Shown in pieces: positions 1,919 to 61,793 of a DNA stretch of 64,000 nt. The DNA is taken from positions 124,001 through 188,000 of the IMG/VR virus record IMGVR_UViG_3300042558_003926; one strand, written 5' to 3'. The notes below the pieces were generated by a model that saw nothing but the letters and a program-made list of their open reading frames with translations, was not told the origin of the DNA and did not search any database. A program made the translations under genes and the position numbers. Numbering within the stretch: position 1 is the stretch's first letter; every line of letters starts with the position of its first letter.

Positions 1919-4414
1919 ATGTTTGTAATAAAAAGAGACGGTTCTAAGGAACCCGTTAGGTTTGAAAAAGTTTCTAATAGAATTAAAAAAATGACTTATG
2001 GTCTAAATCCTGATCATATTGATTCTTTAGAGATTGCGCAAAAAGTTATTGCCGGAATCTACGATGGAATTTCTACACAGGAGTTAGACAATCTTGCAGC
2101 TGAAACTGCAGCATCGCTTATCCCAAATCACCCAGATTATTCAATATTAGCTTCAAGAATAGCAGTTTCTAGATTGCATAAGACAACTAAGAAGAAGTTT
2201 TCTGAAACGATAGAAGATCTTTATAGCTATATAGATCCTGAAACTAATACTCCAGCAGGTCTTATTAACGACGAGACATATAAGGTCGTTATGAAGAATA
2301 AACAGAAACTGGATGGAGCCATCATACACGAGAGGGACTTTAATTTCGAATATTTTGGATTCAAAACATTGGAGAAGAGTTATCTTTTAAAGACATATGG
2401 GGAGACAACGGAAACTCCTCAGCATATGTACATGCGAGTAGCAGTTGGTATATGGGGAGATAATCTGAAGAATGTAATTAAAACATACGAGTTACTTTCT
2501 AATCATTTAATGACCCACGCAACGCCAACATTATTTAATGCTGGAACAAAAAAACCACAGCTATCTTCTTGTTTTCTTTTAATGATGTCGGATGATTCTA
2601 TTCCCGGAATCTATAAGACGTTATCCGATGTTGCTGTTATCTCTCAGAATGCCGGAGGTATAGGACTTGCTATTCATAACGTTAGAAGTACGGGTTCTTA
2701 TATTAAAGGAACAAACGGAACTTCCAATGGAATTGTTCCTATGCTAAAAGTTTTCAACGAAACTGCAAGATATGTAGATCAAGGTGGAGGCAAAAGAAAA
2801 GGATCTTTTGCTATTTATGTAGAACCATGGCATGCTGACATTGAGTCTTTTCTAGATCTTAGAAAGAATACAGGGAAAGAAGAACTTAGAGCAAGAGATT
2901 TATTTTTGGCTTTATGGACCCCTGACTTATTTATGAAGAGGGTTAAAGAGAGCGGAGAATGGTCATTATTTTCTCCTTCTGATGTTCCTGGGCTTTGGGA
3001 ATTATACGGAGAGGATTTCGAGAAAGCTTATATCGATGCTGAACTTTCAGGAAAGGCTAGAAAGACAATAAAAGCCAGGGATTTATGGACAAAAATTATT
3101 GATTCACAAATCGAGACCGGAACTCCATATATGCTTTATAAGGATGCTGCTAACAAAAAATCAAATCAGCAAAATCTTGGTACAATAAAAAGTTCTAATC
3201 TTTGTACGGAGATCTTAGAATATACTTCTAAGGACGAGCAAGCTGTTTGTAACCTTGCATCTATCCCGGTAAATAAATTCTTAAAATCTACAGACAATAG
3301 GACTTCAAAGATAGCCAGAGGAAAATGTGAGGTTGATCATAAAGCCTTATATGATGTAGCTTACCAAACAGCTATCAACCTAAATAAGGTTATTGACGTT
3401 AACTATTACCCGACAAAAGAAACTGAGAGATCTAACATGAGACACCGTCCAATCGGTATCGGTATACAAGGTCTAGCAGATCTTTTTGCAATTATGGGTA
3501 TTCCTTTTACTTGTTTAGAGGCTAAGAAAATAAACGAGGAAGTATTTGAGACAATTTACTTTGCGTCAATGTCCGCTTCAATGGACTTAGCTAGAAGAGA
3601 CGGAAAATATGAAACATTTGACGGTTCACCACTTAGCAAAGGAGATTTCCAATTTAACCTTTGGGGATTCAAAGACGAACAACTTTCCGGAAGATGGGAT
3701 TGGGCTAAATTGAGAAAGGAAGTAATGAAACACGGAGCAAGAAACTCTTTGCTTTTAGCTCCAATGCCAACTGCTTCCACTGCACAAATAATGGGTAACA
3801 ACGAGGCTTTTGAACCTTTTACATCCAATATCTATACCAGAAGAACACTAAGTGGTGAGTTTATTCTTGTAAATAAACATCTAGTTAGGGATCTTATTTC
3901 TTTAGGTCTATGGAGCGATGATATGAAAAACATGATTATCCTACATAAGGGATCGGTTCAGAATATTCCACAAATACCAGAAGCTGTTAGAGAAACATAT
4001 AAAACTGTATGGGAAATAAAGCAGAAGGATCTAATAGATATGTCTGCTGGAAGAGGCAAATTTATTTGCCAATCACAATCACTAAATCTCTTTATAGAGA
4101 ATGTTAATGCTGCTAAATTAACTTCGGCACATTTCCATTCTTGGGAATTAGGACTAAAAACAGGAATGTACTACTTAAGGACTAAATCAGCGGTGGATGC
4201 AATTGCTGGTTTGGGTATAGACATGGAAAAGGCAAAGAAATCTTTGAAAACAACAGAGGAAAAAATTCCAACTCCAGTAAAAGAAAATACCGAGGAGAAG
4301 ATAGATATGCTTGGCATGACAAGCGAAGAACTAAGTAAGGCAGCAGAAAATATGATGTCTGATATAGTTTGTAGCTTAGACAATCCTGACGATTGTCTTG
4401 CTTGCGGATCATAA
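1919..4414 (+). CDS. nrdA: Class Ia ribonucleotide reductase alpha subunit
   Basis: ATP cone (VIKRDG), TPTLFNAGT, SSCF, NLCTE catalytic motif, C-terminal CxxC (CLAC). Confidence 0.97.
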   Translation: MFVIKRDGSKEPVRFEKVSNRIKKMTYGLNPDHIDSLEIAQKVIAGIYDGISTQELDNLAAETAASLIPNHPDYSILASRIAVSRLHKTTKKKFSETIEDLYSYIDPETNTPAGLINDETYKVVMKNKQKLDGAIIHERDFNFEYFGFKTLEKSYLLKTYGETTETPQHMYMRVAVGIWGDNLKNVIKTYELLSNHLMTHATPTLFNAGTKKPQLSSCFLLMMSDDSIPGIYKTLSDVAVISQNAGGIGLAIHNVRSTGSYIKGTNGTSNGIVPMLKVFNETARYVDQGGGKRKGSFAIYVEPWHADIESFLDLRKNTGKEELRARDLFLALWTPDLFMKRVKESGEWSLFSPSDVPGLWELYGEDFEKAYIDAELSGKARKTIKARDLWTKIIDSQIETGTPYMLYKDAANKKSNQQNLGTIKSSNLCTEILEYTSKDEQAVCNLASIPVNKFLKSTDNRTSKIARGKCEVDHKALYDVAYQTAINLNKVIDVNYYPTKETERSNMRHRPIGIGIQGLADLFAIMGIPFTCLEAKKINEEVFETIYFASMSASMDLARRDGKYETFDGSPLSKGDFQFNLWGFKDEQLSGRWDWAKLRKEVMKHGARNSLLLAPMPTASTAQIMGNNEAFEPFTSNIYTRRTLSGEFILVNKHLVRDLISLGLWSDDMKNMIILHKGSVQNIPQIPEAVRETYKTVWEIKQKDLIDMSAGRGKFICQSQSLNLFIENVNAAKLTSAHFHSWELGLKTGMYYLRTKSAVDAIAGLGIDMEKAKKSLKTTEEKIPTPVKENTEEKIDMLGMTSEELSKAAENMMSDIVCSLDNPDDCLACGS

Positions 4415-32871: not shown

Positions 32872-33942
32872 ATGAATAAAACTAAATTCGATTTCGATGA
32901 TATCCTGATTCAACCTTCTATAGTTAGCGATATATCTTCTCGTAGTGAGGTTACCGTTACATATAATGATGGGTACCTCCCTCTATTTACTGCTCCTATG
33001 GATACTGTAGTTAGCGAGAATAATATTGAACTTTTTCAGGCTAAAGGGATAAGAGTTGTGAAGCCAAGAACCCTGAATACACCATACAGTGGTTATGGAA
33101 CGGATTTCAATGAATTCATTTCTCTTGGTTTAGACGAATTCATTAAAATTTATCTAGGTAAAAAAAAGAATGAATATGATGACCAGATGTTTATTCTCAT
33201 CGACATTGCAAATGGGCATATGAGAAAGCTTATTGATTCTGTTAAGAAAGCTAAAGAAACATACGGTGATTCTTTAATTCTCATGGTGGGTAATATAGCC
33301 AATCCTAAGACATACTCCGATCTTTCCGAAGCAGGAGCTGATTTTGTAAGAGTTGGGATAGGAAACGGCGGAGGTTGCTTAACGACGGTTCAAACTGGAG
33401 TTGGCTATCCTATGGCATCTTTAATTAAAGAATGTTACATCGAAAGCTGTTTGATGAATACCCCCGCGAAGATTGTTGCTGATGGCGGATTTAAAAGCTA
33501 TTCTGATATTATAAAAGCTCTTGGACTAGGAGCAGATTATGTTATGCTTGGTTCAATATTGAATAAAGCTTTGGAGAGCGCAGGTGACACATACTTAGCT
33601 AATACTAAAGGTGAGGGATGGACTGAGCCGGGTGAAAGGATCAATCAATATGCTGCTGAGACAGAGAATCTGTTCAAGTACGGTACTAAGATGTTTAAGA
33701 AGTTTAGAGGGATGAGTACCAAGGAGGCTCAGAAGGCTATGGGTAAGACAGAGTTGAAAACTAGCGAAGGAGTTAGTCGAATGCAACCAGTAGAATACAC
33801 ATTAGAAGGATGGACTGAAAACTTTAGAAGCTACCTTTCCTCCGCAATGAGCTATTCCGATGCAGCCGATCTTAAGAGCTTTATAGGTCTTGCTAAGTTC
33901 AACTACGTAACTCCAAATTCTTTAAACAGATATAAAAAATGA
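32872..33942 (+). CDS. IMPDH/GMP-reductase family protein
   Basis: FDFDDILI, APMDTV, IDIANGH, VGNIAN, VGIGNGGGCLT, ADGG, GADYVMLGS, FRGMS, SEG. Confidence 0.88.
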   Translation: MNKTKFDFDDILIQPSIVSDISSRSEVTVTYNDGYLPLFTAPMDTVVSENNIELFQAKGIRVVKPRTLNTPYSGYGTDFNEFISLGLDEFIKIYLGKKKNEYDDQMFILIDIANGHMRKLIDSVKKAKETYGDSLILMVGNIANPKTYSDLSEAGADFVRVGIGNGGGCLTTVQTGVGYPMASLIKECYIESCLMNTPAKIVADGGFKSYSDIIKALGLGADYVMLGSILNKALESAGDTYLANTKGEGWTEPGERINQYAAETENLFKYGTKMFKKFRGMSTKEAQKAMGKTELKTSEGVSRMQPVEYTLEGWTENFRSYLSSAMSYSDAADLKSFIGLAKFNYVTPNSLNRYKK

Positions 33943-34247
33943 GAAAGGGAGATTTCTGCTTACTTAATTCGGAGGGATGCCTATTGTACTGCAAGAGGCA
34001 TAATGAATATGTAACTAAAAACTCTGAAGAGGAAATATGTCACCATGTGTTTGTTATCTACGATATGGAAGACTGTATAGTTGATATTTTAGATTCCGAT
34101 AAAATGAAGGAATTCATCCACGGTGATTTGGAACTACATGGCCAATTAAAAAGCTACAAATATTCAGAATTTCCGGGGAGCATGAAACCAGACCTTAGAA
34201 GCCTGGATGAATTTATAGGTATAGATACTACGGGAAAAATATATTAA
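33939..34247 (+). CDS. Hypothetical protein
   Basis: 102-aa ORF. Confidence 0.5.
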   Translation: MRKGDFCLLNSEGCLLYCKRHNEYVTKNSEEEICHHVFVIYDMEDCIVDILDSDKMKEFIHGDLELHGQLKSYKYSEFPGSMKPDLRSLDEFIGIDTTGKIY

Positions 34248-34283
34248 AATTTTTTTGGTATATAAAGCAAAAAAAAAATTTTA

Positions 34284-34733
34284 ATGAAATCTAGCTATTA
34301 TTTAAACATAGATCTCGTATCGAAAAGAAAATTTACTCAGGAGGATTTAGAAAAAATAAAAAATTCTCTGGAGCTAAATGAGGATTTCTTCGATCTTTGC
34401 TCCATACTTGCAGAATCTATATCAATGAACTTTAGCAGCCACATAGAAATATATGTGGAGGATGCAGAATTCGATTCCGATAAATTAAATGAGGTTGAGG
34501 AATTCGTAAATATTCTCGATTCGACTATATCAGGTGGATGGGGTAACGATTCTAAAATAGAGTGGACATCCGAATATCCAAATGTCTCTTATTTGTGGTT
34601 TAAGAATGACGATTCTTGGGATCTGGTAACAAAGGATCATGATAGAGGCGTATGGGGTGAGGAGGAAGAATGGGATTCCAAAGATTCCGGTTATGGATAC
34701 GGTGGAGATTTAGATCCCGATGATAATTGGTAA
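34284..34733 (+). CDS. Acidic hypothetical protein
   Basis: 149-aa ORF. Confidence 0.55.
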   Translation: MKSSYYLNIDLVSKRKFTQEDLEKIKNSLELNEDFFDLCSILAESISMNFSSHIEIYVEDAEFDSDKLNEVEEFVNILDSTISGGWGNDSKIEWTSEYPNVSYLWFKNDDSWDLVTKDHDRGVWGEEEEWDSKDSGYGYGGDLDPDDNW

Positions 34734-34736
34734 ATA

Positions 34737-34766
34737 CGGAACATTCTAGAAAATCAAATATATAAT
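34737..34766 (+). promoter_or_regulatory. Putative promoter CGGAAC-N18-TATAAT
   Basis: Variant of the TGAAAC motif. Predicted start near 34772. Confidence 0.55.
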
Positions 34767-34771
34767 AACTG

Positions 34772-34866
34772 AGGAAAGAGCCTTTAGCACTTATCGTCTC
34801 GGGTCATTTGGCCTTAGAGTTGTTTTAAAAGAGCAACGAAGAGATATTAAAAAAACAAAAGGTAAT
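34772..34866 (+). promoter_or_regulatory. Structured 5' leader whose first 11 nt complement the 3' end of the transcript
   Basis: AGGAAAGAGCC is the reverse complement of GGCTCTTTCCT (35725-35735). Internal hairpins GGTCA/TGGCC and GTTGTTT/GAGCAAC. Confidence 0.55.
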
Positions 34867-35712
34867 ATGAAAAAAAGCAGATCGGGAGTGGATATCTCCC
34901 AAAGACCCCAAGCATGGATCGCCGTATCCAACAACAGGCAAAAACTCTACGGCGAAGATCAGGATAAGATCTATTTGGAAGATGGACAAGAATTCCAAAT
35001 AGAATTATACAATCCAACATCAACCACTTATCTTTCTAAGATTTACATCAACGGGAAACTAATGTCTAGTTCTGGATTGGTTTTAAAACCAGGACAGAGG
35101 TATTTTCTAGACAGACACATAGATGTAAAGAAGAAGTTAGTTTTCTCAACTTATGATGTTGAGAACAGCGAGGAGGTGAAAAAGGCAATTGAAAAAAATG
35201 GTCTAGTTAAGGTTGAATTTTACGCCGAGACAACACCTAACGATTGGCATGGGCAAAAAATAACTTGGGACACATACACATCGTATCCAACTTATACTTC
35301 GCCAACTTATAATCCACCAACTTATAATCCTACGATAACTTTTGGTGGATCCACAATTAACACTCTTTTCACGACAACGAATACCTCAAATCAGATAGTA
35401 GGAAATTCTAGCTACACAACTAATCTAGTTAATTGCTCAGCAGCTGGATCTTTATCCACTACATCTATTTTATCCACTACACCTATTGAAACAGGAAGAG
35501 TAGAGGAAGGAAGTAAATCGGACCAGAATTTTGGAAAAGATAATGGTACGTATTCAATCTTTAAATCTTATGAATCTGAGTATCAGATTCTACCAAGATC
35601 TACTAAACCTGTAGAGATCAGCGAGATTAGAGAGTACTGCACTGAGTGTGGAACAAGAATAAAGAAAAAAAGCTGGAAATTCTGCCCATCTTGCGGCGGA
35701 AATCTAGAATAA
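34867..35712 (+). CDS. Hypothetical protein with C-terminal zinc ribbon
   Basis: CxxCG...CPxCG. Ig-like N-terminus and PTY low-complexity linker. Confidence 0.75.
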   Translation: MKKSRSGVDISQRPQAWIAVSNNRQKLYGEDQDKIYLEDGQEFQIELYNPTSTTYLSKIYINGKLMSSSGLVLKPGQRYFLDRHIDVKKKLVFSTYDVENSEEVKKAIEKNGLVKVEFYAETTPNDWHGQKITWDTYTSYPTYTSPTYNPPTYNPTITFGGSTINTLFTTTNTSNQIVGNSSYTTNLVNCSAAGSLSTTSILSTTPIETGRVEEGSKSDQNFGKDNGTYSIFKSYESEYQILPRSTKPVEISEIREYCTECGTRIKKKSWKFCPSCGGNLE

Positions 35713-35786
35713 ATTAAATTGCGGGGCTCTTTCCTTTTTTATAGAGAACTATTCTCAAAATCCGCATATAATTAAAAAAGATCTAG

Positions 35787-37724
35787 GTGAAAGTATTTTT
35801 TATTGTACCACATTTGTCTACCGGAGGAATGCCGGAATACCTAAAGAACAAGATAGAAAAAATTAAGGACTCCTGCGATATCTGGGTTTTAGAAAAATCA
35901 CATGAGAGAACTTATAATACCATCCGAAAAAGAATAGAATCATTAATAGGCGAGGATCGAATTGTAACATGGGGGGTTAAGAAAAAGATGATTCTTGACA
36001 TGATAGAATCTATCAAGCCCGATGTAATACATTTCGAAGAACCCTGTGAACACTTCCTATCGGATGACATTCTGATGAGGATATTCAGTAAGGATAGAAA
36101 TTACAGAATTATAGAGACTTTCCACGACTCGTCAATGGAAGCAGAGGAGAAAAGATTTCTCCCAGATAAATTTATTGTAGTTAGCCCTTGGCAAGTAAAG
36201 TTACTCCAGAAATTAAAAGTACCAATGGAAGTTATAGAACATAAATTAGAAGAGAAACCAGTTAGAGATAGTTCTCTTGCTAAAAAGAAACTTGGAATGG
36301 ATCCATCTAGGAAACACATTGTCCAGGTAGGAATATTCACCCCAAGAAAAAACCAATCAGAAACAATCAATATAGCCAGAATCCTTCCGGATTGTGATTT
36401 CTATTTAATAGGAACTTTGGCTGATAATTTTAAATGGTACTGGACTCCACTCATGGAAAATTTACCTTCAAATTGTAAAGTCCTGGGGGAAAGAGACGAC
36501 GTAGATCTTTTTTACGAAGCCGCTGATCTTATTATATTCCCATCGGTAGAGAACTTTAATGATAAGGAAACAAGTCCATTAGTTCTTAAAGAAGCAACTT
36601 CTTGGAAAGCACCTCTTCTTATGAAAAATACACCGGTCTACTCTGACATGTATCAGGAATCTGATCGGATTCATTTTATGGGAGATTCTATTAACTATAA
36701 TGCAAATAAAATTTTAAAAATATTCGGAAATATGGAAAACACGGCTCAGAAATTTTTTGCCAGATTTGAATCAGAAGAAAACAAGATAATAATAAATCTG
36801 ATGGAGAATAATGTTGGTGATGTTAATGTGTCAATTAAAGATCGTGATTCAAACACCTGCGTATACTCATTTTCTCTAAATGCAGATCACTCTGGATCCG
36901 AATGGTGGACTATTCCGATTCCTAAACCATACTTTGATTTTCAGGAAGATCGTAACTTTAGCGGGTTTCTTATTGAATTTTACAGCTCACAGACTGGCGA
37001 AATTATACAATCGATAACGATTGATCTTGGTAAAAAACCAATCATGAAGAAAAGAATAGTTGCTAATGGACCAATTAATTTTGATCCTATATTTGTTAAC
37101 TATACGCAGTTCTTTGTAGATGGAATATACAACCAGTTTTTTGCTGGATCTAGAATCAGCACAGCTATAGACATCGGAGCTAACGTTGGACTTTTCACTG
37201 AATGGGTTTTGGATAGGTTTGGTAGTGATACAAGAGTAATTTCGGTAGAGCCTAACTCTAAGGCTTGTTTATCTTTTGAGTCCATGCACTCCGGAAAAGA
37301 AAATGTTACATTGGATAAGCTGGCGGTAACATCCACAGATGGTGAAACTATTAGACTCATGGTAAATCCAGAAAACACCCTGATATCTAGTGTAGAGGGA
37401 ACCGGCGATGGTTATTCTGAATTCGAAGAAGTTGGAACAATATCTCTCATTGGACTTATGAAGAAATACGATCTTGAGGAAGTAGATCTTTTAAAAGTTG
37501 ATGTCGAGGGAGCTGAGTATGATATATTTAGTTCTGTTGAAGAGAATGATCTTAGAAGATTTAAACATCTTCTGATAGAATTTCACAATAATCAGGGAAG
37601 AGCTTCTTCTCTTATTTCTAAGATAGTTTCGGCTGGGTTTGAAATAGATCTTAGAGACGATGATACCAGATACGCAGTGGATCAAAATAACGACAGAGGA
37701 ACAATATTTGCTACAAGGAAATGA
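35787..37724 (+). CDS. GT4 glycosyltransferase fused to FkbM-family methyltransferase
   Basis: HLSTGGMPE, RKNQ, E(x7)E region. C-terminal IDIGANVG, VEP, LKVDVEGAEY. Confidence 0.88.
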   Translation: MKVFFIVPHLSTGGMPEYLKNKIEKIKDSCDIWVLEKSHERTYNTIRKRIESLIGEDRIVTWGVKKKMILDMIESIKPDVIHFEEPCEHFLSDDILMRIFSKDRNYRIIETFHDSSMEAEEKRFLPDKFIVVSPWQVKLLQKLKVPMEVIEHKLEEKPVRDSSLAKKKLGMDPSRKHIVQVGIFTPRKNQSETINIARILPDCDFYLIGTLADNFKWYWTPLMENLPSNCKVLGERDDVDLFYEAADLIIFPSVENFNDKETSPLVLKEATSWKAPLLMKNTPVYSDMYQESDRIHFMGDSINYNANKILKIFGNMENTAQKFFARFESEENKIIINLMENNVGDVNVSIKDRDSNTCVYSFSLNADHSGSEWWTIPIPKPYFDFQEDRNFSGFLIEFYSSQTGEIIQSITIDLGKKPIMKKRIVANGPINFDPIFVNYTQFFVDGIYNQFFAGSRISTAIDIGANVGLFTEWVLDRFGSDTRVISVEPNSKACLSFESMHSGKENVTLDKLAVTSTDGETIRLMVNPENTLISSVEGTGDGYSEFEEVGTISLIGLMKKYDLEEVDLLKVDVEGAEYDIFSSVEENDLRRFKHLLIEFHNNQGRASSLISKIVSAGFEIDLRDDDTRYAVDQNNDRGTIFATRK

Positions 37725-60116: not shown

Positions 60117-61793
60117 TTAGTAATTTACTGTTGTTTTATAAGCTGGAGCGATGAGATAATAATTAGTACTCCCCCCACTCAAGGGTGAGTTTATTGTTAT
60201 CGATGATACACCCGGGATAGCTAATCTCATATCGGATGTATTTGCTATCAATGTGTTATATTGTGCTGTTGTATATAATTTTGATGGTGTCATACCTATC
60301 CAATTTGGCAGAAACCCAAATCTTCTTAAATTGATATATGTTTCATCAGCGACGTTTATCTTACCGTCGTAGTTAACGTCATATCTATTGTAATGAATAC
60401 TCTTAAGCGGGGTTGTACCTAAAATCAGCTTAGATACTTCAACCATATCATTTATATTTAAAGATGTGATTGGAGTTAAAGCATCTATTTGTATGTACCA
60501 TTCAGTTGCTGGGTTTGTAGGTTGGGAAAAACTATAATATCCGGAAGAATTAGTATATACTATTTGGTGTAATGCCCATGGTGTAAAATCATTGATATAA
60601 TCAAACTCTATAACATAAGGTAATGAGGTGTTTGCTAAATCGTTCCACTTGCCACCACCAACAAATTGGGTATAATCCTCAGTTCCTGAGTTGTTTGGTT
60701 CTCCTGGGTTCCAATTGGTATATTGGTTTGTCCTATATCTGTATGCGTACAGGTTAAATGTTCTATCAATTTCATCCACTGTAATTGCTCTATCGAAAAA
60801 CTGGATGAGACCTAATCTAAACGCTCCGAACCCGCCATGGCCCATATTGGTAGCATCATTCAGACCAAAAGCAAAATGTTGTTGTCCGTTACCACCATGT
60901 ATAAATGCGGCTTGGCGAGAAAAGTTAACACTACCAAAGCTTACATTATTAAGATATCCTCTCATAGTGGTTCCATCGTAAGTAATGCAGACCATATTCC
61001 AAGTATTAAGAGTGATAGCAGTACTCAATTGAACAATTCCGCTAGCGCTCCAAAAACCAACTCGTAATGTGTTAGATCCAGTAATCTCCATAATTGACTC
61101 GTGCCAACCTGACGATGGATTCGCAACATTTAATTCTGAAGCTATCACTCCATTTCCAGTAGGATAAACCCAAGCAACTACTGATATTGCTGTTGATGAG
61201 AACTGCGAAGATAAGTTATTAGTTATTGCATACTGATTAGACCCATTAAAGGCTAAGTATTTACCGCCCGTACTTGTATAGACTGGAGAATTGTATAGTG
61301 TTGCATTTACGGATGATTTTATATCCACTAAAGTTGATCCCGATGTGTAGGATGACACATCATAATCCGTCTTCAATCCACTAGTAACCTGTGTTTCTGT
61401 CCAACGATATCCCCCAACCGGTTCGGAATAAGTATATCCAGCAACTTTATCCTGATAGTATCCAATCCAACCCGATGGCCATGTATTAAACAAGAAGTTA
61501 TTTTCAGAAACATTAGAAACAGTTGCTAAGTGACCTCCCATGTTTTCACAAGCAGTTTTTGCGCTTGTCCAAGTCATCGATCCAGTAGAACGATAATATG
61601 AATGCCCGTTATAATTTGTTTGTGATGTAAATCCTACTAATGTCGGAGTGGTTCTTCTATATAATTTAATTGGCACATTTACAGCACCAGTTCCATCCGC
61701 GTTGTAGATATAACCGGAATGTGTAAAAGTTTGTGCATCTAGCGGTAACACACAAAATAATATTATTGCCCAACTAATAATCTTGTTCCACAT
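60117..61793 (-). CDS. Exported C-type lectin / LamG / dockerin-like protein
   Basis: TWTSAKTACENMGGHLA, WIG, WNPGEPN, WND. LamG-like insert and YDVNYDGKINVAD. Confidence 0.75.
   Translation of the reverse strand: MWNKIISWAIILFCVLPLDAQTFTHSGYIYNADGTGAVNVPIKLYRRTTPTLVGFTSQTNYNGHSYYRSTGSMTWTSAKTACENMGGHLATVSNVSENNFLFNTWPSGWIGYYQDKVAGYTYSEPVGGYRWTETQVTSGLKTDYDVSSYTSGSTLVDIKSSVNATLYNSPVYTSTGGKYLAFNGSNQYAITNNLSSQFSSTAISVVAWVYPTGNGVIASELNVANPSSGWHESIMEITGSNTLRVGFWSASGIVQLSTAITLNTWNMVCITYDGTTMRGYLNNVSFGSVNFSRQAAFIHGGNGQQHFAFGLNDATNMGHGGFGAFRLGLIQFFDRAITVDEIDRTFNLYAYRYRTNQYTNWNPGEPNNSGTEDYTQFVGGGKWNDLANTSLPYVIEFDYINDFTPWALHQIVYTNSSGYYSFSQPTNPATEWYIQIDALTPITSLNINDMVEVSKLILGTTPLKSIHYNRYDVNYDGKINVADETYINLRRFGFLPNWIGMTPSKLYTTAQYNTLIANTSDMRLAIPGVSSITINSPLSGGSTNYYLIAPAYKTTVNY

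What the first reader, a model, noticed from the sequence alone, without database searches (positions are those of the whole stretch)
34737..35740. Transcript whose 5' and 3' ends are complementary, with a whole ORF in the loop
Seen: the predicted start (about 34772) begins AGGAAAGAGCC. Just after the stop codon lies its exact reverse complement GGCTCTTTCCT (35725-35) followed by a U run, and pairing extends to about 14 bp with G-U. No strong local terminator hairpin is evident, so the terminator stem arms appear to be about 950 nt apart. The 95-nt leader also folds, and CCTTT (34781-85) can alternatively pair with AAAGG next to the start codon. Inference: long-range, switchable termination or translation control, an end-closed nuclease-resistant mRNA, or terminal inverted repeats of a small mobile cassette carrying the zinc-ribbon protein.
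Basis: partly seen in the sequence, partly recalled or inferred. Interest (0 to 1): 0.7.

Follow-up and report, generated by a model that had tools for sequence, protein, structure and literature searches.

The report
Phage mRNA closed by end-to-end pairing
The two ends of this roughly 970-base phage messenger RNA really are complementary, the pairing is kept through compensating changes in dozens of distant huge-phage relatives, and it sits beside a previously undescribed folded leader, so it is a genuine RNA device whose purpose is still untested.

Summary
AGGAAAGAGCC (34772-34782) and its exact complement (35725-35735) flank ORF 34867-35712. With G-U pairs the helix is 14 bp, plus 3 more inner pairs. 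Inside this one 289.7-kb phage genome such a match is not significant: 1.7% of random upstream/downstream pairs score as high.

Comparison settles it. The ORF is a conserved huge-phage protein with 673 homologues. In 46 of 61 distinct homologous loci, the segment just before the leader pairs with a segment 0-21 nt after the stop codon. The arm sequences differ completely between clades. Self-pairing beats cross-locus pairing (0 of 20000 permutations). Mismatches inside helices are G-U type 11 times and A-C type once, which points to sense-strand RNA. The nearest relatives show a compensatory A-U to G-C change and a compensatory 1-nt deletion in both arms.

The leader is a new three-way-junction RNA: 17 of 19 pairs covary and Rfam has no match. 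The 5' segment also carries a covarying complement of the ribosome-binding site.

A mobile cassette is rejected. Roles in termination, RNase III processing, stability or translation remain inferred. The closest known cases are hok tac/fbi and the icaR 5'-3' UTR pairing.

The parts
34738..34766 (+). Putative promoter: GGAAC(A), an 18-nt spacer, then TATAAT (34761-34766). The expected start is about 34772-34774.
   Evidence: The GGAAC/GAAAC box and the ATATA(A/T)A box are conserved in the leader alignment. The pattern GAAC-N16-18-TATAAT matches here and again at 35746-35772. The promoter is inferred, not mapped.
34771..34789 (+). 5' arm (P0 segment) at the very start of the transcript. 34771-34784 pairs with 35723-35736, and 34787-34789 pairs with 35720-35722.
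   Evidence: Base-pair probability is 1.00 in the whole-transcript fold. Covariation is shown.
34780..34785 (+). GCCUUU, a complement of the ribosome-binding site. It overlaps the 5' arm and can alternatively pair with 34858-34863.
   Evidence: Leader-alone minimum-energy fold. Clade-specific covariation: GCCUGA:UCAGGU, UUUCCUU:AAGGAAA, UCUGG:CCAGA and others. Permutation test: 2 of 20000.
34791..34850 (+). Conserved three-way-junction leader. P1 is 34791-34800 with 34841-34850. P2 is 34801-34805 with 34810-34814. P3 is 34819-34824 with 34832-34837. The junctions are UAGAG (34815-19) and GAA (34838-40).
   Evidence: RNAalifold finds 17 of 19 pairs with compensatory changes. Pair counting gives 95.8% paired and a covariation score of 0.744 against 0.283 in shuffles, 0 of 500. 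The covariance model hits this genome once.
34858..34869 (+). Ribosome-binding site AAAGGU (34858-34863) and start codon ATG (34867-34869), preceded by an A-rich spacer.
34867..35712 (+). ORF of 281 aa with an N-terminal beta-sandwich domain, a low-complexity Thr/Ser/Asn linker and a C-terminal CxxC...CxxC zinc ribbon. It is a conserved huge-phage protein of unknown function.
35720..35736 (+). 3' arm, starting 8-10 nt after the stop codon.
35735..35741 (+). T (U) run directly after the 3' arm. It may be a termination tract for the long-range helix. It also lies just upstream of the next promoter's GAAC box.
   Evidence: It is kept in L008, which has lost the 3' arm.
35746..35772 (+). Second promoter-like site of the same type (GAAC-N17-TATAAT), serving the downstream glycosyltransferase/FkbM-methyltransferase gene. 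It marks the end of the unit.

Best explanation
This is a conserved RNA device, not a chance repeat.

What is shown: the monocistronic mRNA of a conserved huge-phage gene is closed into a panhandle. Its first 11-25 nucleotides pair with a segment that begins 0-21 nt after the stop codon. These first nucleotides (the P0 segment) start at the predicted +1, or in some relatives 2-3 nt after an upstream tRNA. Right next to the 5' arm lies a conserved three-way-junction leader, then an A-rich spacer and the ribosome-binding site. The 5' segment has three competing partners: its own 3' half (a local P0 hairpin), the ribosome-binding site (it contains a covarying complement such as GCCUUU for AAAGGU), and the 3' arm.

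What is inferred: once the 3' arm has been transcribed, it captures the 5' end together with that complement. I propose three consequences. (i) The 5' end is hidden from 5'-end-dependent decay, and the region after the stop codon is tied up. (ii) The ribosome-binding site stays open only on full-length RNA. (iii) Start and stop regions are brought together. In the window's clade the 3' arm is followed directly by a U run and there is no proper local hairpin, so the same helix may also serve as the terminator stem.
For: - Sequence and fold in the window.
- In 46 of 61 distinct homologous loci the duplex is -18 kcal/mol or stronger, at the same two places, with unrelated arm sequences.
- Self versus cross-locus helix score over 24 cluster representatives is 25.9 against 16.7 (sd 4.0). 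None of 20000 permutations reaches the observed sum.
- The four positions outward from the shared GCC/GGC anchor show 2-4 different standard pair types, apart from one invariant G-C.
- With a strand-symmetric helix definition, mismatches are G-U type 11 times and A-C type once.
- In the nearest clade, L100 changes A-U to G-C at the outermost Watson-Crick pair (34772-35735). L046 and L102 delete one base in both arms. The inner helix changes GCA:UGC to CGC:GCG and to AAGCUU:AAGUUU.
- The helix is in the global minimum-energy fold of the whole 0.86-1.0 kb transcript in 23 of 23 representatives, with base-pair probability 0.82-1.00.
- The 5' arm starts at the predicted +1, or 2-3 nt after a tRNA-Ser gene end in L059, L077 and L086.
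- The leader junction covaries.
- The complement of the ribosome-binding site covaries with that site.
- Adding the 3' arm to the leader raises the predicted unpaired fraction of the ribosome-binding site from 0.64 to 0.78; a reversed-arm control gives 0.64.
- The same leader, with yet another arm pair, occurs in a 462-kb huge phage.
Against: - No transcript ends are mapped. The metatranscriptome contigs are sparse.
- One RNA-library contig crosses the promoter and the 5' arm (34707-34856), so read-through RNA or contaminating DNA exists.
- Seven of 24 clusters lack a 3' arm, including L008, which belongs to the window's own 5'-arm cluster. The helix is therefore dispensable.
- In whole-transcript models, removing the 3' arm changes ribosome-binding-site accessibility very little (window 0.74 against 0.71). 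It matters clearly only in L017 and L048.
- The complementarity to the ribosome-binding site is short, 5-7 bp, and exceeds the cross-locus control only modestly: 12.4 against 10.7.
- Transcript ends in the folds were set at the arms, which favours a closing helix.
- The T run may belong to the next promoter's upstream region.
Confidence: 0.6

Rival explanations
1. Processing stalk. The 17-27 bp long-range duplex is cut by the host's RNase III or another double-strand-specific nuclease. This excises the gene's mRNA from longer precursors, as the helices flanking 16S and 23S rRNA do, and leaves paired, stable ends.
For: - There is no terminator between the upstream gene and the promoter.
- An RNA-library contig spans 34707-34856.
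- In L059, L077 and L086 the 5' arm begins 2-3 nt after a tRNA gene, so there is no room for a promoter.
- Duplexes of 20 bp or more with internal loops occur in many clades.
- Two independent metatranscriptome contigs of close relatives end at 35724, inside the helix.
- icaR shows that a 5'-3' UTR duplex can be an RNase III substrate (PMC3868564).
Against: - Several clades have helices of only 9-12 bp (L021, L059, L077), which by established knowledge is short for RNase III.
- The phage encodes no RNase III.
- Most loci have a promoter-like box placing +1 at the arm, so no 5' cut is needed.
- Contig ends in assembled RNA data are weak evidence.
Confidence: 0.25
2. Long-range intrinsic terminator. 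When the 3' arm emerges from RNA polymerase it pairs with the free 5' end about 950 nt upstream. This helix, followed by the U run, releases the transcript, so termination depends on the state of the 5' end.
For: - In the window's clade and some others (L002, L041, L042, L046, L060, L096, L100) the 3' arm is followed at once by 4-8 U. No local hairpin of 5 bp or more with 3 G-C pairs is found.
- From established knowledge (Yarnell and Roberts 1999), an oligonucleotide annealing in place of the upstream half of a terminator hairpin can release the transcript. A distant upstream arm is therefore mechanistically possible.
Against: - At least nine clusters have a normal 9-12 bp local terminator after the 3' arm.
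- Others have neither a U run nor a local terminator.
- L008 keeps the T run without the arm.
- The T run lies just upstream of the next promoter's GAAC box.
- The 5' arm could be occupied by the local P0 hairpin or by pairing with the ribosome-binding site.
- No 3' end is mapped at about 35741. Two RNA contigs end earlier, at 35724.
Confidence: 0.15
3. hok-like fold-back lock. The full-length RNA is kept inert by the 5'-3' helix and becomes translatable only after 3' trimming removes the 3' arm.
For: The layout is the same as in hok mRNA: a 5'-terminal element, a 3'-terminal partner, and an alternative local partner that is a complement of the ribosome-binding site (PMC9841398).
Against: - Here the 3' arm covers the complement of the ribosome-binding site itself. 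Models therefore predict the full-length form to be the more open one.
- The product is a 281-aa conserved phage protein, not a small toxin.
- No antisense RNA is evident: no strong promoter on the minus strand is aimed at the leader.
Confidence: 0.08
4. DNA-level inverted repeat: terminal repeats of a mobile or invertible cassette, or two binding sites for one DNA-binding protein.
For: An exact 11-bp inverted repeat flanks a single ORF. Recombination can keep inverted repeats matched.
Against: - Gene order around the ORF is conserved in relatives at 60-98% identity.
- No empty site, target duplication or transposase is seen.
- The promoter lies outside the arms and always in the same orientation.
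- The arms carry bulges and differ in length between clades.
- Mismatches are strand-asymmetric, G-U 11 against A-C 1.
- The arm sequences are too varied for a single protein's specificity.
Confidence: 0.03
5. Chance complementarity with no function.
For: Within this genome 1.7% of random upstream/downstream pairs score as high. One-mismatch matches to the 11-mer are at chance level.
Against: Cross-locus permutation gives 0 of 20000. Compensatory changes occur in the nearest clade. Position is conserved.
Confidence: 0.01

Closest known systems
hok mRNA tac/fbi fold-back of the hok/Sok type I toxin-antitoxin system (PMC9841398)
   Same: The extreme 5' end pairs with the 3' end of the same mRNA. 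The 5' element has an alternative local partner that is a complement of the ribosome-binding site. The structure is supported by covariation, and nascent and full-length RNA are expected to fold differently.
   Different: hok mRNA is about 400 nt and encodes a small toxin. It has an antisense regulator, and its full-length form is the closed, untranslatable one. Here the mRNA is about 970 nt and encodes a 281-aa conserved phage protein. No antisense RNA is seen. The 3' arm covers the complement of the ribosome-binding site, so the full-length form is predicted to be open.
icaR mRNA 5'-3' UTR pairing in Staphylococcus aureus (PMC3868564)
   Same: A bacterial protein-coding mRNA whose 3' UTR pairs with its own 5' UTR. 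The pairing has consequences for ribosome access and creates double-stranded RNA.
   Different: In icaR a UCCCC motif in a long 3' UTR pairs with the Shine-Dalgarno sequence itself, represses translation and triggers RNase III cleavage. Here the 3' arm lies 8-10 nt after the stop codon. It pairs with the 5'-terminal nucleotides and the complement of the ribosome-binding site, not with the site itself.
rRNA precursor processing stalks: helices formed by the flanks of 16S and 23S rRNA and cut by RNase III (established knowledge)
   Same: A helix formed by sequences 1 kb or more apart encloses a whole functional RNA. In some relatives a tRNA lies directly upstream.
   Different: The enclosed RNA here is an mRNA. 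Cleavage is not shown, and in several clades the helix is shorter than typical RNase III substrates.
Rho-independent (intrinsic) terminators (established knowledge)
   Same: A G+C-containing helix is followed immediately by a U run at the end of a gene, in the window's clade.
   Different: The two stem arms are about 950 nt apart rather than separated by a 3-8 nt loop. Other clades carry an ordinary local terminator after the 3' arm.
5'-terminal stem-loop mRNA stabilisers, such as the ompA 5' UTR (established knowledge)
   Same: The first nucleotides of the transcript are base-paired. In known cases this blocks 5'-end-dependent decay.
   Different: Here the partner can be a distant 3' segment as well as a local strand. 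A stability effect has not been measured.

Membership tests
Rho-independent terminator | Local G+C-rich hairpin (stem of about 5-14 bp, loop of 3-8 nt) immediately before the U tract | tested here: not met
   The consensus scan finds none on the + strand at 35700-35760. Local folding gives only a 4-bp GGGG/UUCC stem with two G-U pairs and a z-score of 0.05.
Rho-independent terminator | U tract directly after the stem | tested here: met
   There are seven T at 35735-35741, the first of which (35735) pairs with A34772 in the helix.
Rho-independent terminator | Transcript 3' ends map in the U tract | tested here: inconclusive
   Only sparse assembled metatranscriptome contigs are available. Two of them end at 35724, not at 35741.
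hok-like type I toxin mRNA (tac/fbi) | 5'-terminal element pairs with a 3'-terminal element of the same mRNA, supported by covariation | tested here: met
hok-like type I toxin mRNA (tac/fbi) | Small (about 50 aa) hydrophobic toxin ORF and a cis-encoded antisense RNA | tested here: not met
   The ORF is a 281-aa beta-sandwich and zinc-ribbon protein with 673 phage homologues. No convincing antisense promoter faces the leader.
hok-like type I toxin mRNA (tac/fbi) | The full-length form sequesters the ribosome-binding site, and 3' trimming activates it | tested here: not met
   Models predict the ribosome-binding site to be equally or more open with the 3' arm present. This is modelling only; there is no experiment.
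Transposon, MITE or invertible cassette with terminal inverted repeats | Presence/absence or inversion polymorphism, target-site duplication, an associated recombinase, and repeats at synteny breakpoints | tested here: not met
   Neighbours and orientation are constant in relatives. No direct repeat flanks the arms. The only ORF is the conserved phage protein.
RNase III processing site | Double-stranded RNA of about two helical turns | tested here: inconclusive
   The window has 14+3 bp with an internal loop. Some clades have 22-27 bp, others only 9-12 bp.
RNase III processing site | Cleavage by RNase III | not testable with these tools
   No end-mapped data exist. The phage encodes no RNase III.
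Any Rfam 15 family | Match to a curated covariance model | tested here: not met
   In 34000-36500 the six listed matches (E 0.75-6.6, 14-19 bits) lie far below their gathering scores, and none overlaps the leader.
Riboswitch or protein-binding leader (operator) | Conserved junction nucleotides in a covarying multi-helix fold upstream of a ribosome-binding site, with alternative pairing | tested here: met
   The three-way junction has invariant U.GA and A positions in its junctions. The alternative pairing with the ribosome-binding site is shown.
Riboswitch or protein-binding leader (operator) | An identified ligand or binding protein | not testable with these tools
   The complex prediction was not folded. 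The protein's function is unknown.

The most novel reading that the evidence does not exclude
The mRNA's own 5' end is the upstream half of its terminator and also the licence for its translation. On this reading, transcription stops at the U run only when the nascent 3' arm can capture the free 5'-terminal segment about 950 nt upstream. The resulting end-to-end closed mRNA is the only form that is both protected and translatable. This would be a self-checking, full-length-only mRNA design, conserved across huge phages and tuned by the adjacent three-way-junction leader, which may bind a protein or a ligand.
Probability: 0.12. Interest if true: 0.9.

Novelty: new variant of a known kind. Interest (0 to 1): 0.72.

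Why it matters
Pairing between the 5' and 3' ends of one bacterial-type mRNA is known from only a few cases, such as hok-like toxin mRNAs and icaR. Those cases are short RNAs or single species.

Here an ordinary protein-coding mRNA of nearly 1 kb is closed by a helix that has been maintained, with complete turnover of its sequence, across a very broad set of uncultivated huge phages with genomes of about 250-460 kb. The helix comes with a leader fold that is not in Rfam.

This gives a natural, richly covarying system for asking how long-range RNA contacts form during coupled transcription and translation. It can also test whether they control decay, processing, termination or ribosome loading, and whether a distant 5' arm can stand in for a terminator hairpin. 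Finally, it marks an unknown but very widespread huge-phage protein as one whose expression is under unusual control.

Tried and rejected
- Nucleotide search of 50,697 phage records with the 2-kb region found no match.
- Rfam at a permissive threshold gave nothing on the leader or the 3' end.
- Pfam and PHROGs found only a C-terminal zinc ribbon. The AlphaFold model is poor (mean pLDDT 51.5). Foldseek and the ESM Atlas returned only generic beta-sandwich hits or unnamed phage clusters. The protein's function stays unknown.
- The protein-plus-leader complex prediction was not folded by the tool, so it is no evidence either way.
- Metatranscriptomes hold only six short contigs on this stretch, with no read-level ends and no joints.
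- My first G-U versus A-C count on RNAduplex structures was biased. The antisense control also collected many G-U pairs (29 G-U against 12 A-C). I replaced it with a strand-symmetric helix definition.
- I looked for stronger local P0 hairpins in clades without a 3' arm. This was not supported: mean -2.9 against -4.6 kcal/mol, and the segments were truncated.
- The idea that the 3' arm strongly unmasks the ribosome-binding site is only weakly supported in whole-transcript models. The run was completed for 14 of 20 representatives.
- A genome-wide scan for other genes with end pairing gave mostly A/T-run matches. One apparent case (G000 263705-264004) is really a direct repeat of a hairpin-plus-promoter module.
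- The hammerhead and other small ribozymes were considered for the junction. They were rejected because the core sequences do not fit and Rfam gave no match.
- T4-type mobile promoter/stem-loop cassettes were considered for the repeat (from memory, not tested). They were rejected because those are direct repeats flanking variable ORFs, whereas here the gene and its neighbours are stable.
Full report
**Setting.** The window is bases 124001-188000 of a single 289,651-bp contig with 37% G+C. It is a virus record judged complete. It carries phage replication and nucleotide-metabolism genes. DNA runs holding the region come from lake water metagenomes. The finding concerns ORF 34867-35712 (281 aa) and its flanks.

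**The observation.**
- AGGAAAGAGCC is at 34772-34782 and its exact reverse complement is at 35725-35735, running into a T stretch through 35741. Each 11-mer occurs once in the genome.
- With wobble pairs the helix is 34771-34784 with 35723-35736, that is 11 Watson-Crick and 3 G-U pairs. After a 2-nt bulge, 34787-34789 pairs with 35720-35722.
- A TATAAT box at 34761-34766, with GGAAC 18 nt upstream, puts the likely start at about 34772.
- No local terminator hairpin is detected. Local folding finds only a 4-bp stem and is no better than shuffled sequence.
- The leader-alone fold pairs GCCUUU (34780-85) with AAAGGU (34858-63). The whole-transcript fold instead pairs the 5' arm with the 3' arm.

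On its own, this would not be convincing. Among the 345 ORFs called in this genome, 1.7% of random upstream/downstream pairs reach the same score.

**The gene.** The protein has a C-terminal zinc ribbon and no other family match. It has 673 homologues at E of 0.001 or better, many on contigs of 250-430 kb. tblastn also finds it in Lak phages and other published huge-phage genomes. The alignment shows a conserved N-terminal domain, a variable low-complexity linker and a conserved C-terminal part. Structure prediction and fold searches gave a low-confidence beta-sandwich and no function. Gene order is conserved in relatives at 63-98% identity: RNase HII, an IMPDH-like gene, a 102-aa ORF, a 149-aa ORF, this ORF, then the glycosyltransferase/FkbM gene. 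The immediate neighbours, the 149-aa ORF and the downstream gene, are the same again in further relatives at about 60% identity. This is not how a mobile cassette behaves.

**Comparative test of the arms.** I collected 88 loci and kept 61 with distinct flanks.
- The closest relatives (86-98% identity) have identical intergenic regions and are uninformative.
- In more distant loci the same arrangement recurs with quite different sequences. The segment just upstream of the leader's first helix is complementary to a segment beginning 0-21 nt after the stop codon.
- Examples are UAGAGCCUGAAA/UUUCAGGCUCUA, AUAGAGCCCUUCUA/UAGAAGGGCUCUAU, GAGCCUCGCUCU/AGAGCGAGGCUC, AAGUGGUGCCA/UGGCACCACUU and GGGGAGCCAA/UUGGCUCCCC. 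In one large clade a nearly continuous duplex of 22-27 bp forms.
- Forty-six of the 61 distinct loci, representing 17 of 24 sequence clusters, have a duplex of -18 kcal/mol or stronger.
- Across the 24 cluster representatives, a locus's own 5' and 3' segments give a mean helix score of 25.9. Mismatched partners from other clusters give 16.7 (sd 4.0). None of 20000 permutations reaches the observed sum.
- Anchored on the shared GCC/GGC centre, three of the four neighbouring positions show 2-4 different standard pair types; the fourth is an invariant G-C.
- With a helix definition that treats both strands alike, mismatches inside helices are G-U type 11 times and A-C type once. This is expected for pairing in sense-strand RNA, not for a DNA repeat. 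An earlier count on RNAduplex output was biased and is discarded.
- In the window's own clade, L100 has GGGAAAGAGCC/GGCUCUUUCCC, an A-U to G-C exchange at the outermost Watson-Crick pair. L046 and L102 have lost one A from the 5' arm and one U from the 3' arm. The short inner helix changes from GCA:UGC to CGC:GCG and to AAGCUU:AAGUUU.
- In 23 of 23 representatives the helix is part of the minimum-energy fold of the whole 0.86-1.0 kb transcript, with base-pair probability 0.82-1.00. The caveat is that I set the transcript ends at the arms.
- A 462-kb huge phage (LR756500) has the same leader and yet another arm pair.

**Position of the arms.**
- The 5' arm begins 5-7 nt after a conserved ATATA(A/T)A box.
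- In L059, L077 and L086 it begins 2-3 nt after the annotated end of a tRNA-Ser gene. No promoter fits there, so tRNA 3' processing would create the mRNA's 5' end at the arm.
- In at least nine clusters the 3' arm lies between the stop codon and an ordinary local terminator of 9-12 bp.
- In the window's clade, and in L002, L041, L042 and L060, it is followed directly by a U run without a proper local hairpin.

**The leader.** An alignment of the 61 leaders shows a three-way junction. P1 is 34791-34800 with 34841-34850, P2 is 34801-05 with 34810-14, and P3 is 34819-24 with 34832-37. A few invariant junction bases are present. RNAalifold finds compensatory changes in 17 of 19 pairs. On a model-fitted alignment of 52 sequences, 95.8% of cells pair and the covariation score is 0.744. 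Shuffles give 0.283 (0 of 500 as high), and slid partners give at most 0.24. The model hits this genome once, at this gene. It finds the leader in four of six huge-phage records tested, but not in the two Lak phages tested. Rfam has nothing comparable.

**A third partner for the 5' segment.** The segment that pairs with the 3' arm also contains a stretch complementary to the ribosome-binding region, and the two change together between clades. The pairs seen are GCCUUU:AAAGGU, GCCUGA:UCAGGU, UUUCCUU:AAGGAAA, UCUGG:CCAGA, GGUGC:GCACU and AGAGGUU:AAUCUUU. Self-scores exceed cross-locus scores modestly but significantly: 12.4 against 10.7, with 2 of 20000 permutations as high. The 3' arm always covers this stretch. 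In two-strand models, adding the 3' arm raises the unpaired fraction of the ribosome-binding region from 0.64 to 0.78, while a reversed arm leaves it at 0.64. In whole-transcript models the effect is small, 0.74 against 0.71 in the window, except in two clades. The switch is therefore an inference with weak quantitative support.

**What is shown and what is inferred.**
- Shown: a conserved, covarying, sense-strand RNA helix joins the start of the transcript to the region just after the stop codon. It sits next to a conserved structured leader, and a covarying alternative pairing to the ribosome-binding region exists.
- Inferred: the helix hides the 5' end and the complement of the ribosome-binding site on full-length RNA, favouring stability and translation of complete transcripts.
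- Possible additional or alternative roles: a processing stalk, or the terminator stem in clades with a U run.
- Against an essential role: 7 of 24 clusters lack the 3' arm, including L008, which belongs to the window's own 5'-arm cluster.
- Against the terminator reading: the T run is kept in L008, and it lies just before the GAAC box of a second GAAC-N17-TATAAT site at 35746-35772.

**Transcript data.** Six short contigs from six metatranscriptomic runs lie on the stretch. They show that the ORF occurs in RNA libraries, and nothing more. Two contigs from different runs, both from close relatives, end at 35724, and one crosses 34707-34856. I record these as unexplained. They could reflect a processing site and read-through RNA, or strain variation and contaminating DNA.

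**Comparison with known systems.** The nearest analogues are the hok tac/fbi fold-back and the icaR 5'-3' UTR interaction. By its defining features the element is not a member of either family. It is also not a canonical intrinsic terminator, a transposon-like cassette or any Rfam family. It is best described as a new variant of the known kind "intramolecular 5'-3' UTR pairing in a prokaryotic mRNA", coupled to a new leader motif.

Noticed in passing
window 35720-35725: Two assembled contigs from two different metatranscriptomic runs (X24, X26) both end at 35724. They come from close relatives, each with 5 mismatches. The end lies inside the inner part of the long-range helix, 1 nt before the exact 3' arm. 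This could be an RNA end, or a break in assembly caused by strain variation.
   Followed up: partly
window 34707-34856: A 151-nt contig from an RNA library (X28) spans the end of the upstream gene, the promoter boxes, the 5' arm and much of the leader. Either read-through transcripts exist or DNA contaminates the library. It carries T>C at 34820, a change also seen in L008 where it is compensated within P3.
   Followed up: no
window 34739-34766 and 35746-35772: Two GAAC-N17/18-TATAAT promoter-like sites bracket the ORF. Only one other match occurs in the 64-kb window (61588-61615). Relatives have GGAAC or GAAAC at the same place. This resembles an ECF-type -35 box combined with a sigma-70-type -10 box.
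   Followed up: partly
window 35787-35830: The start of the downstream glycosyltransferase/FkbM-methyltransferase fusion gene is ambiguous. The mechanical ORF starts at GTG 35787 (645 aa). Some relatives are called 14 residues shorter (631 aa), which corresponds to ATG 35829, preceded by GGAGG.
   Followed up: partly
window 35287-35331 and 35451-35486: There are in-frame tandem repeats inside the ORF's linker: three copies of a 15-nt unit (encoding P-T-Y-type repeats) and two copies of an 18-nt unit. Homologues differ greatly in this low-complexity Thr/Ser/Asn-rich region.
   Followed up: no
window 34243-34285: A perfect 14-nt A/T-only inverted repeat (ATTAAAATTTTTTT / AAAAAAATTTTAAT, 15 nt apart) lies exactly at the junction of ORF 33939-34247 and ORF 34284-34733.
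   Followed up: no
L008:2960-3080 and 3913-3990: This is a natural variant at 63% protein identity with the same neighbours. It keeps the leader, the T run and the next promoter, but has lost the 3' arm. Its local 5' hairpin is a perfect 6-bp stem (AAGCGC/GUGCUU), whereas the window's has a mismatch.
   Followed up: partly
G000:C1:259313-259714 (minus strand), outside the window: Another gene of the same phage has a 13-nt complementarity with one mismatch (GGTGTAATCAACT / AGTAGATTACACC). It joins position -66 upstream of the start codon to position +12 after the stop codon. It may be a second end-pairing mRNA.
   Followed up: no
G000:C1:263600-264100, outside the window: An intergenic module is repeated directly on both sides of a 99-aa ORF. 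It consists of the hairpin GGCCCAGG...CCTGGGCC followed by TAATTGTGTACTTTTATA. It looked like end pairing in the scan but is a direct repeat of a hairpin-plus-promoter unit.
   Followed up: partly
L044, L054, L055, L063, L085, L087 (3' UTRs): In this clade there is no 3' arm next to the stop codon. However, the loop and 3' strand of the local terminator are weakly complementary to the 5' hairpin (about -14 kcal/mol, with many G-U pairs). This may be a degenerate version of the arm, or chance.
   Followed up: no
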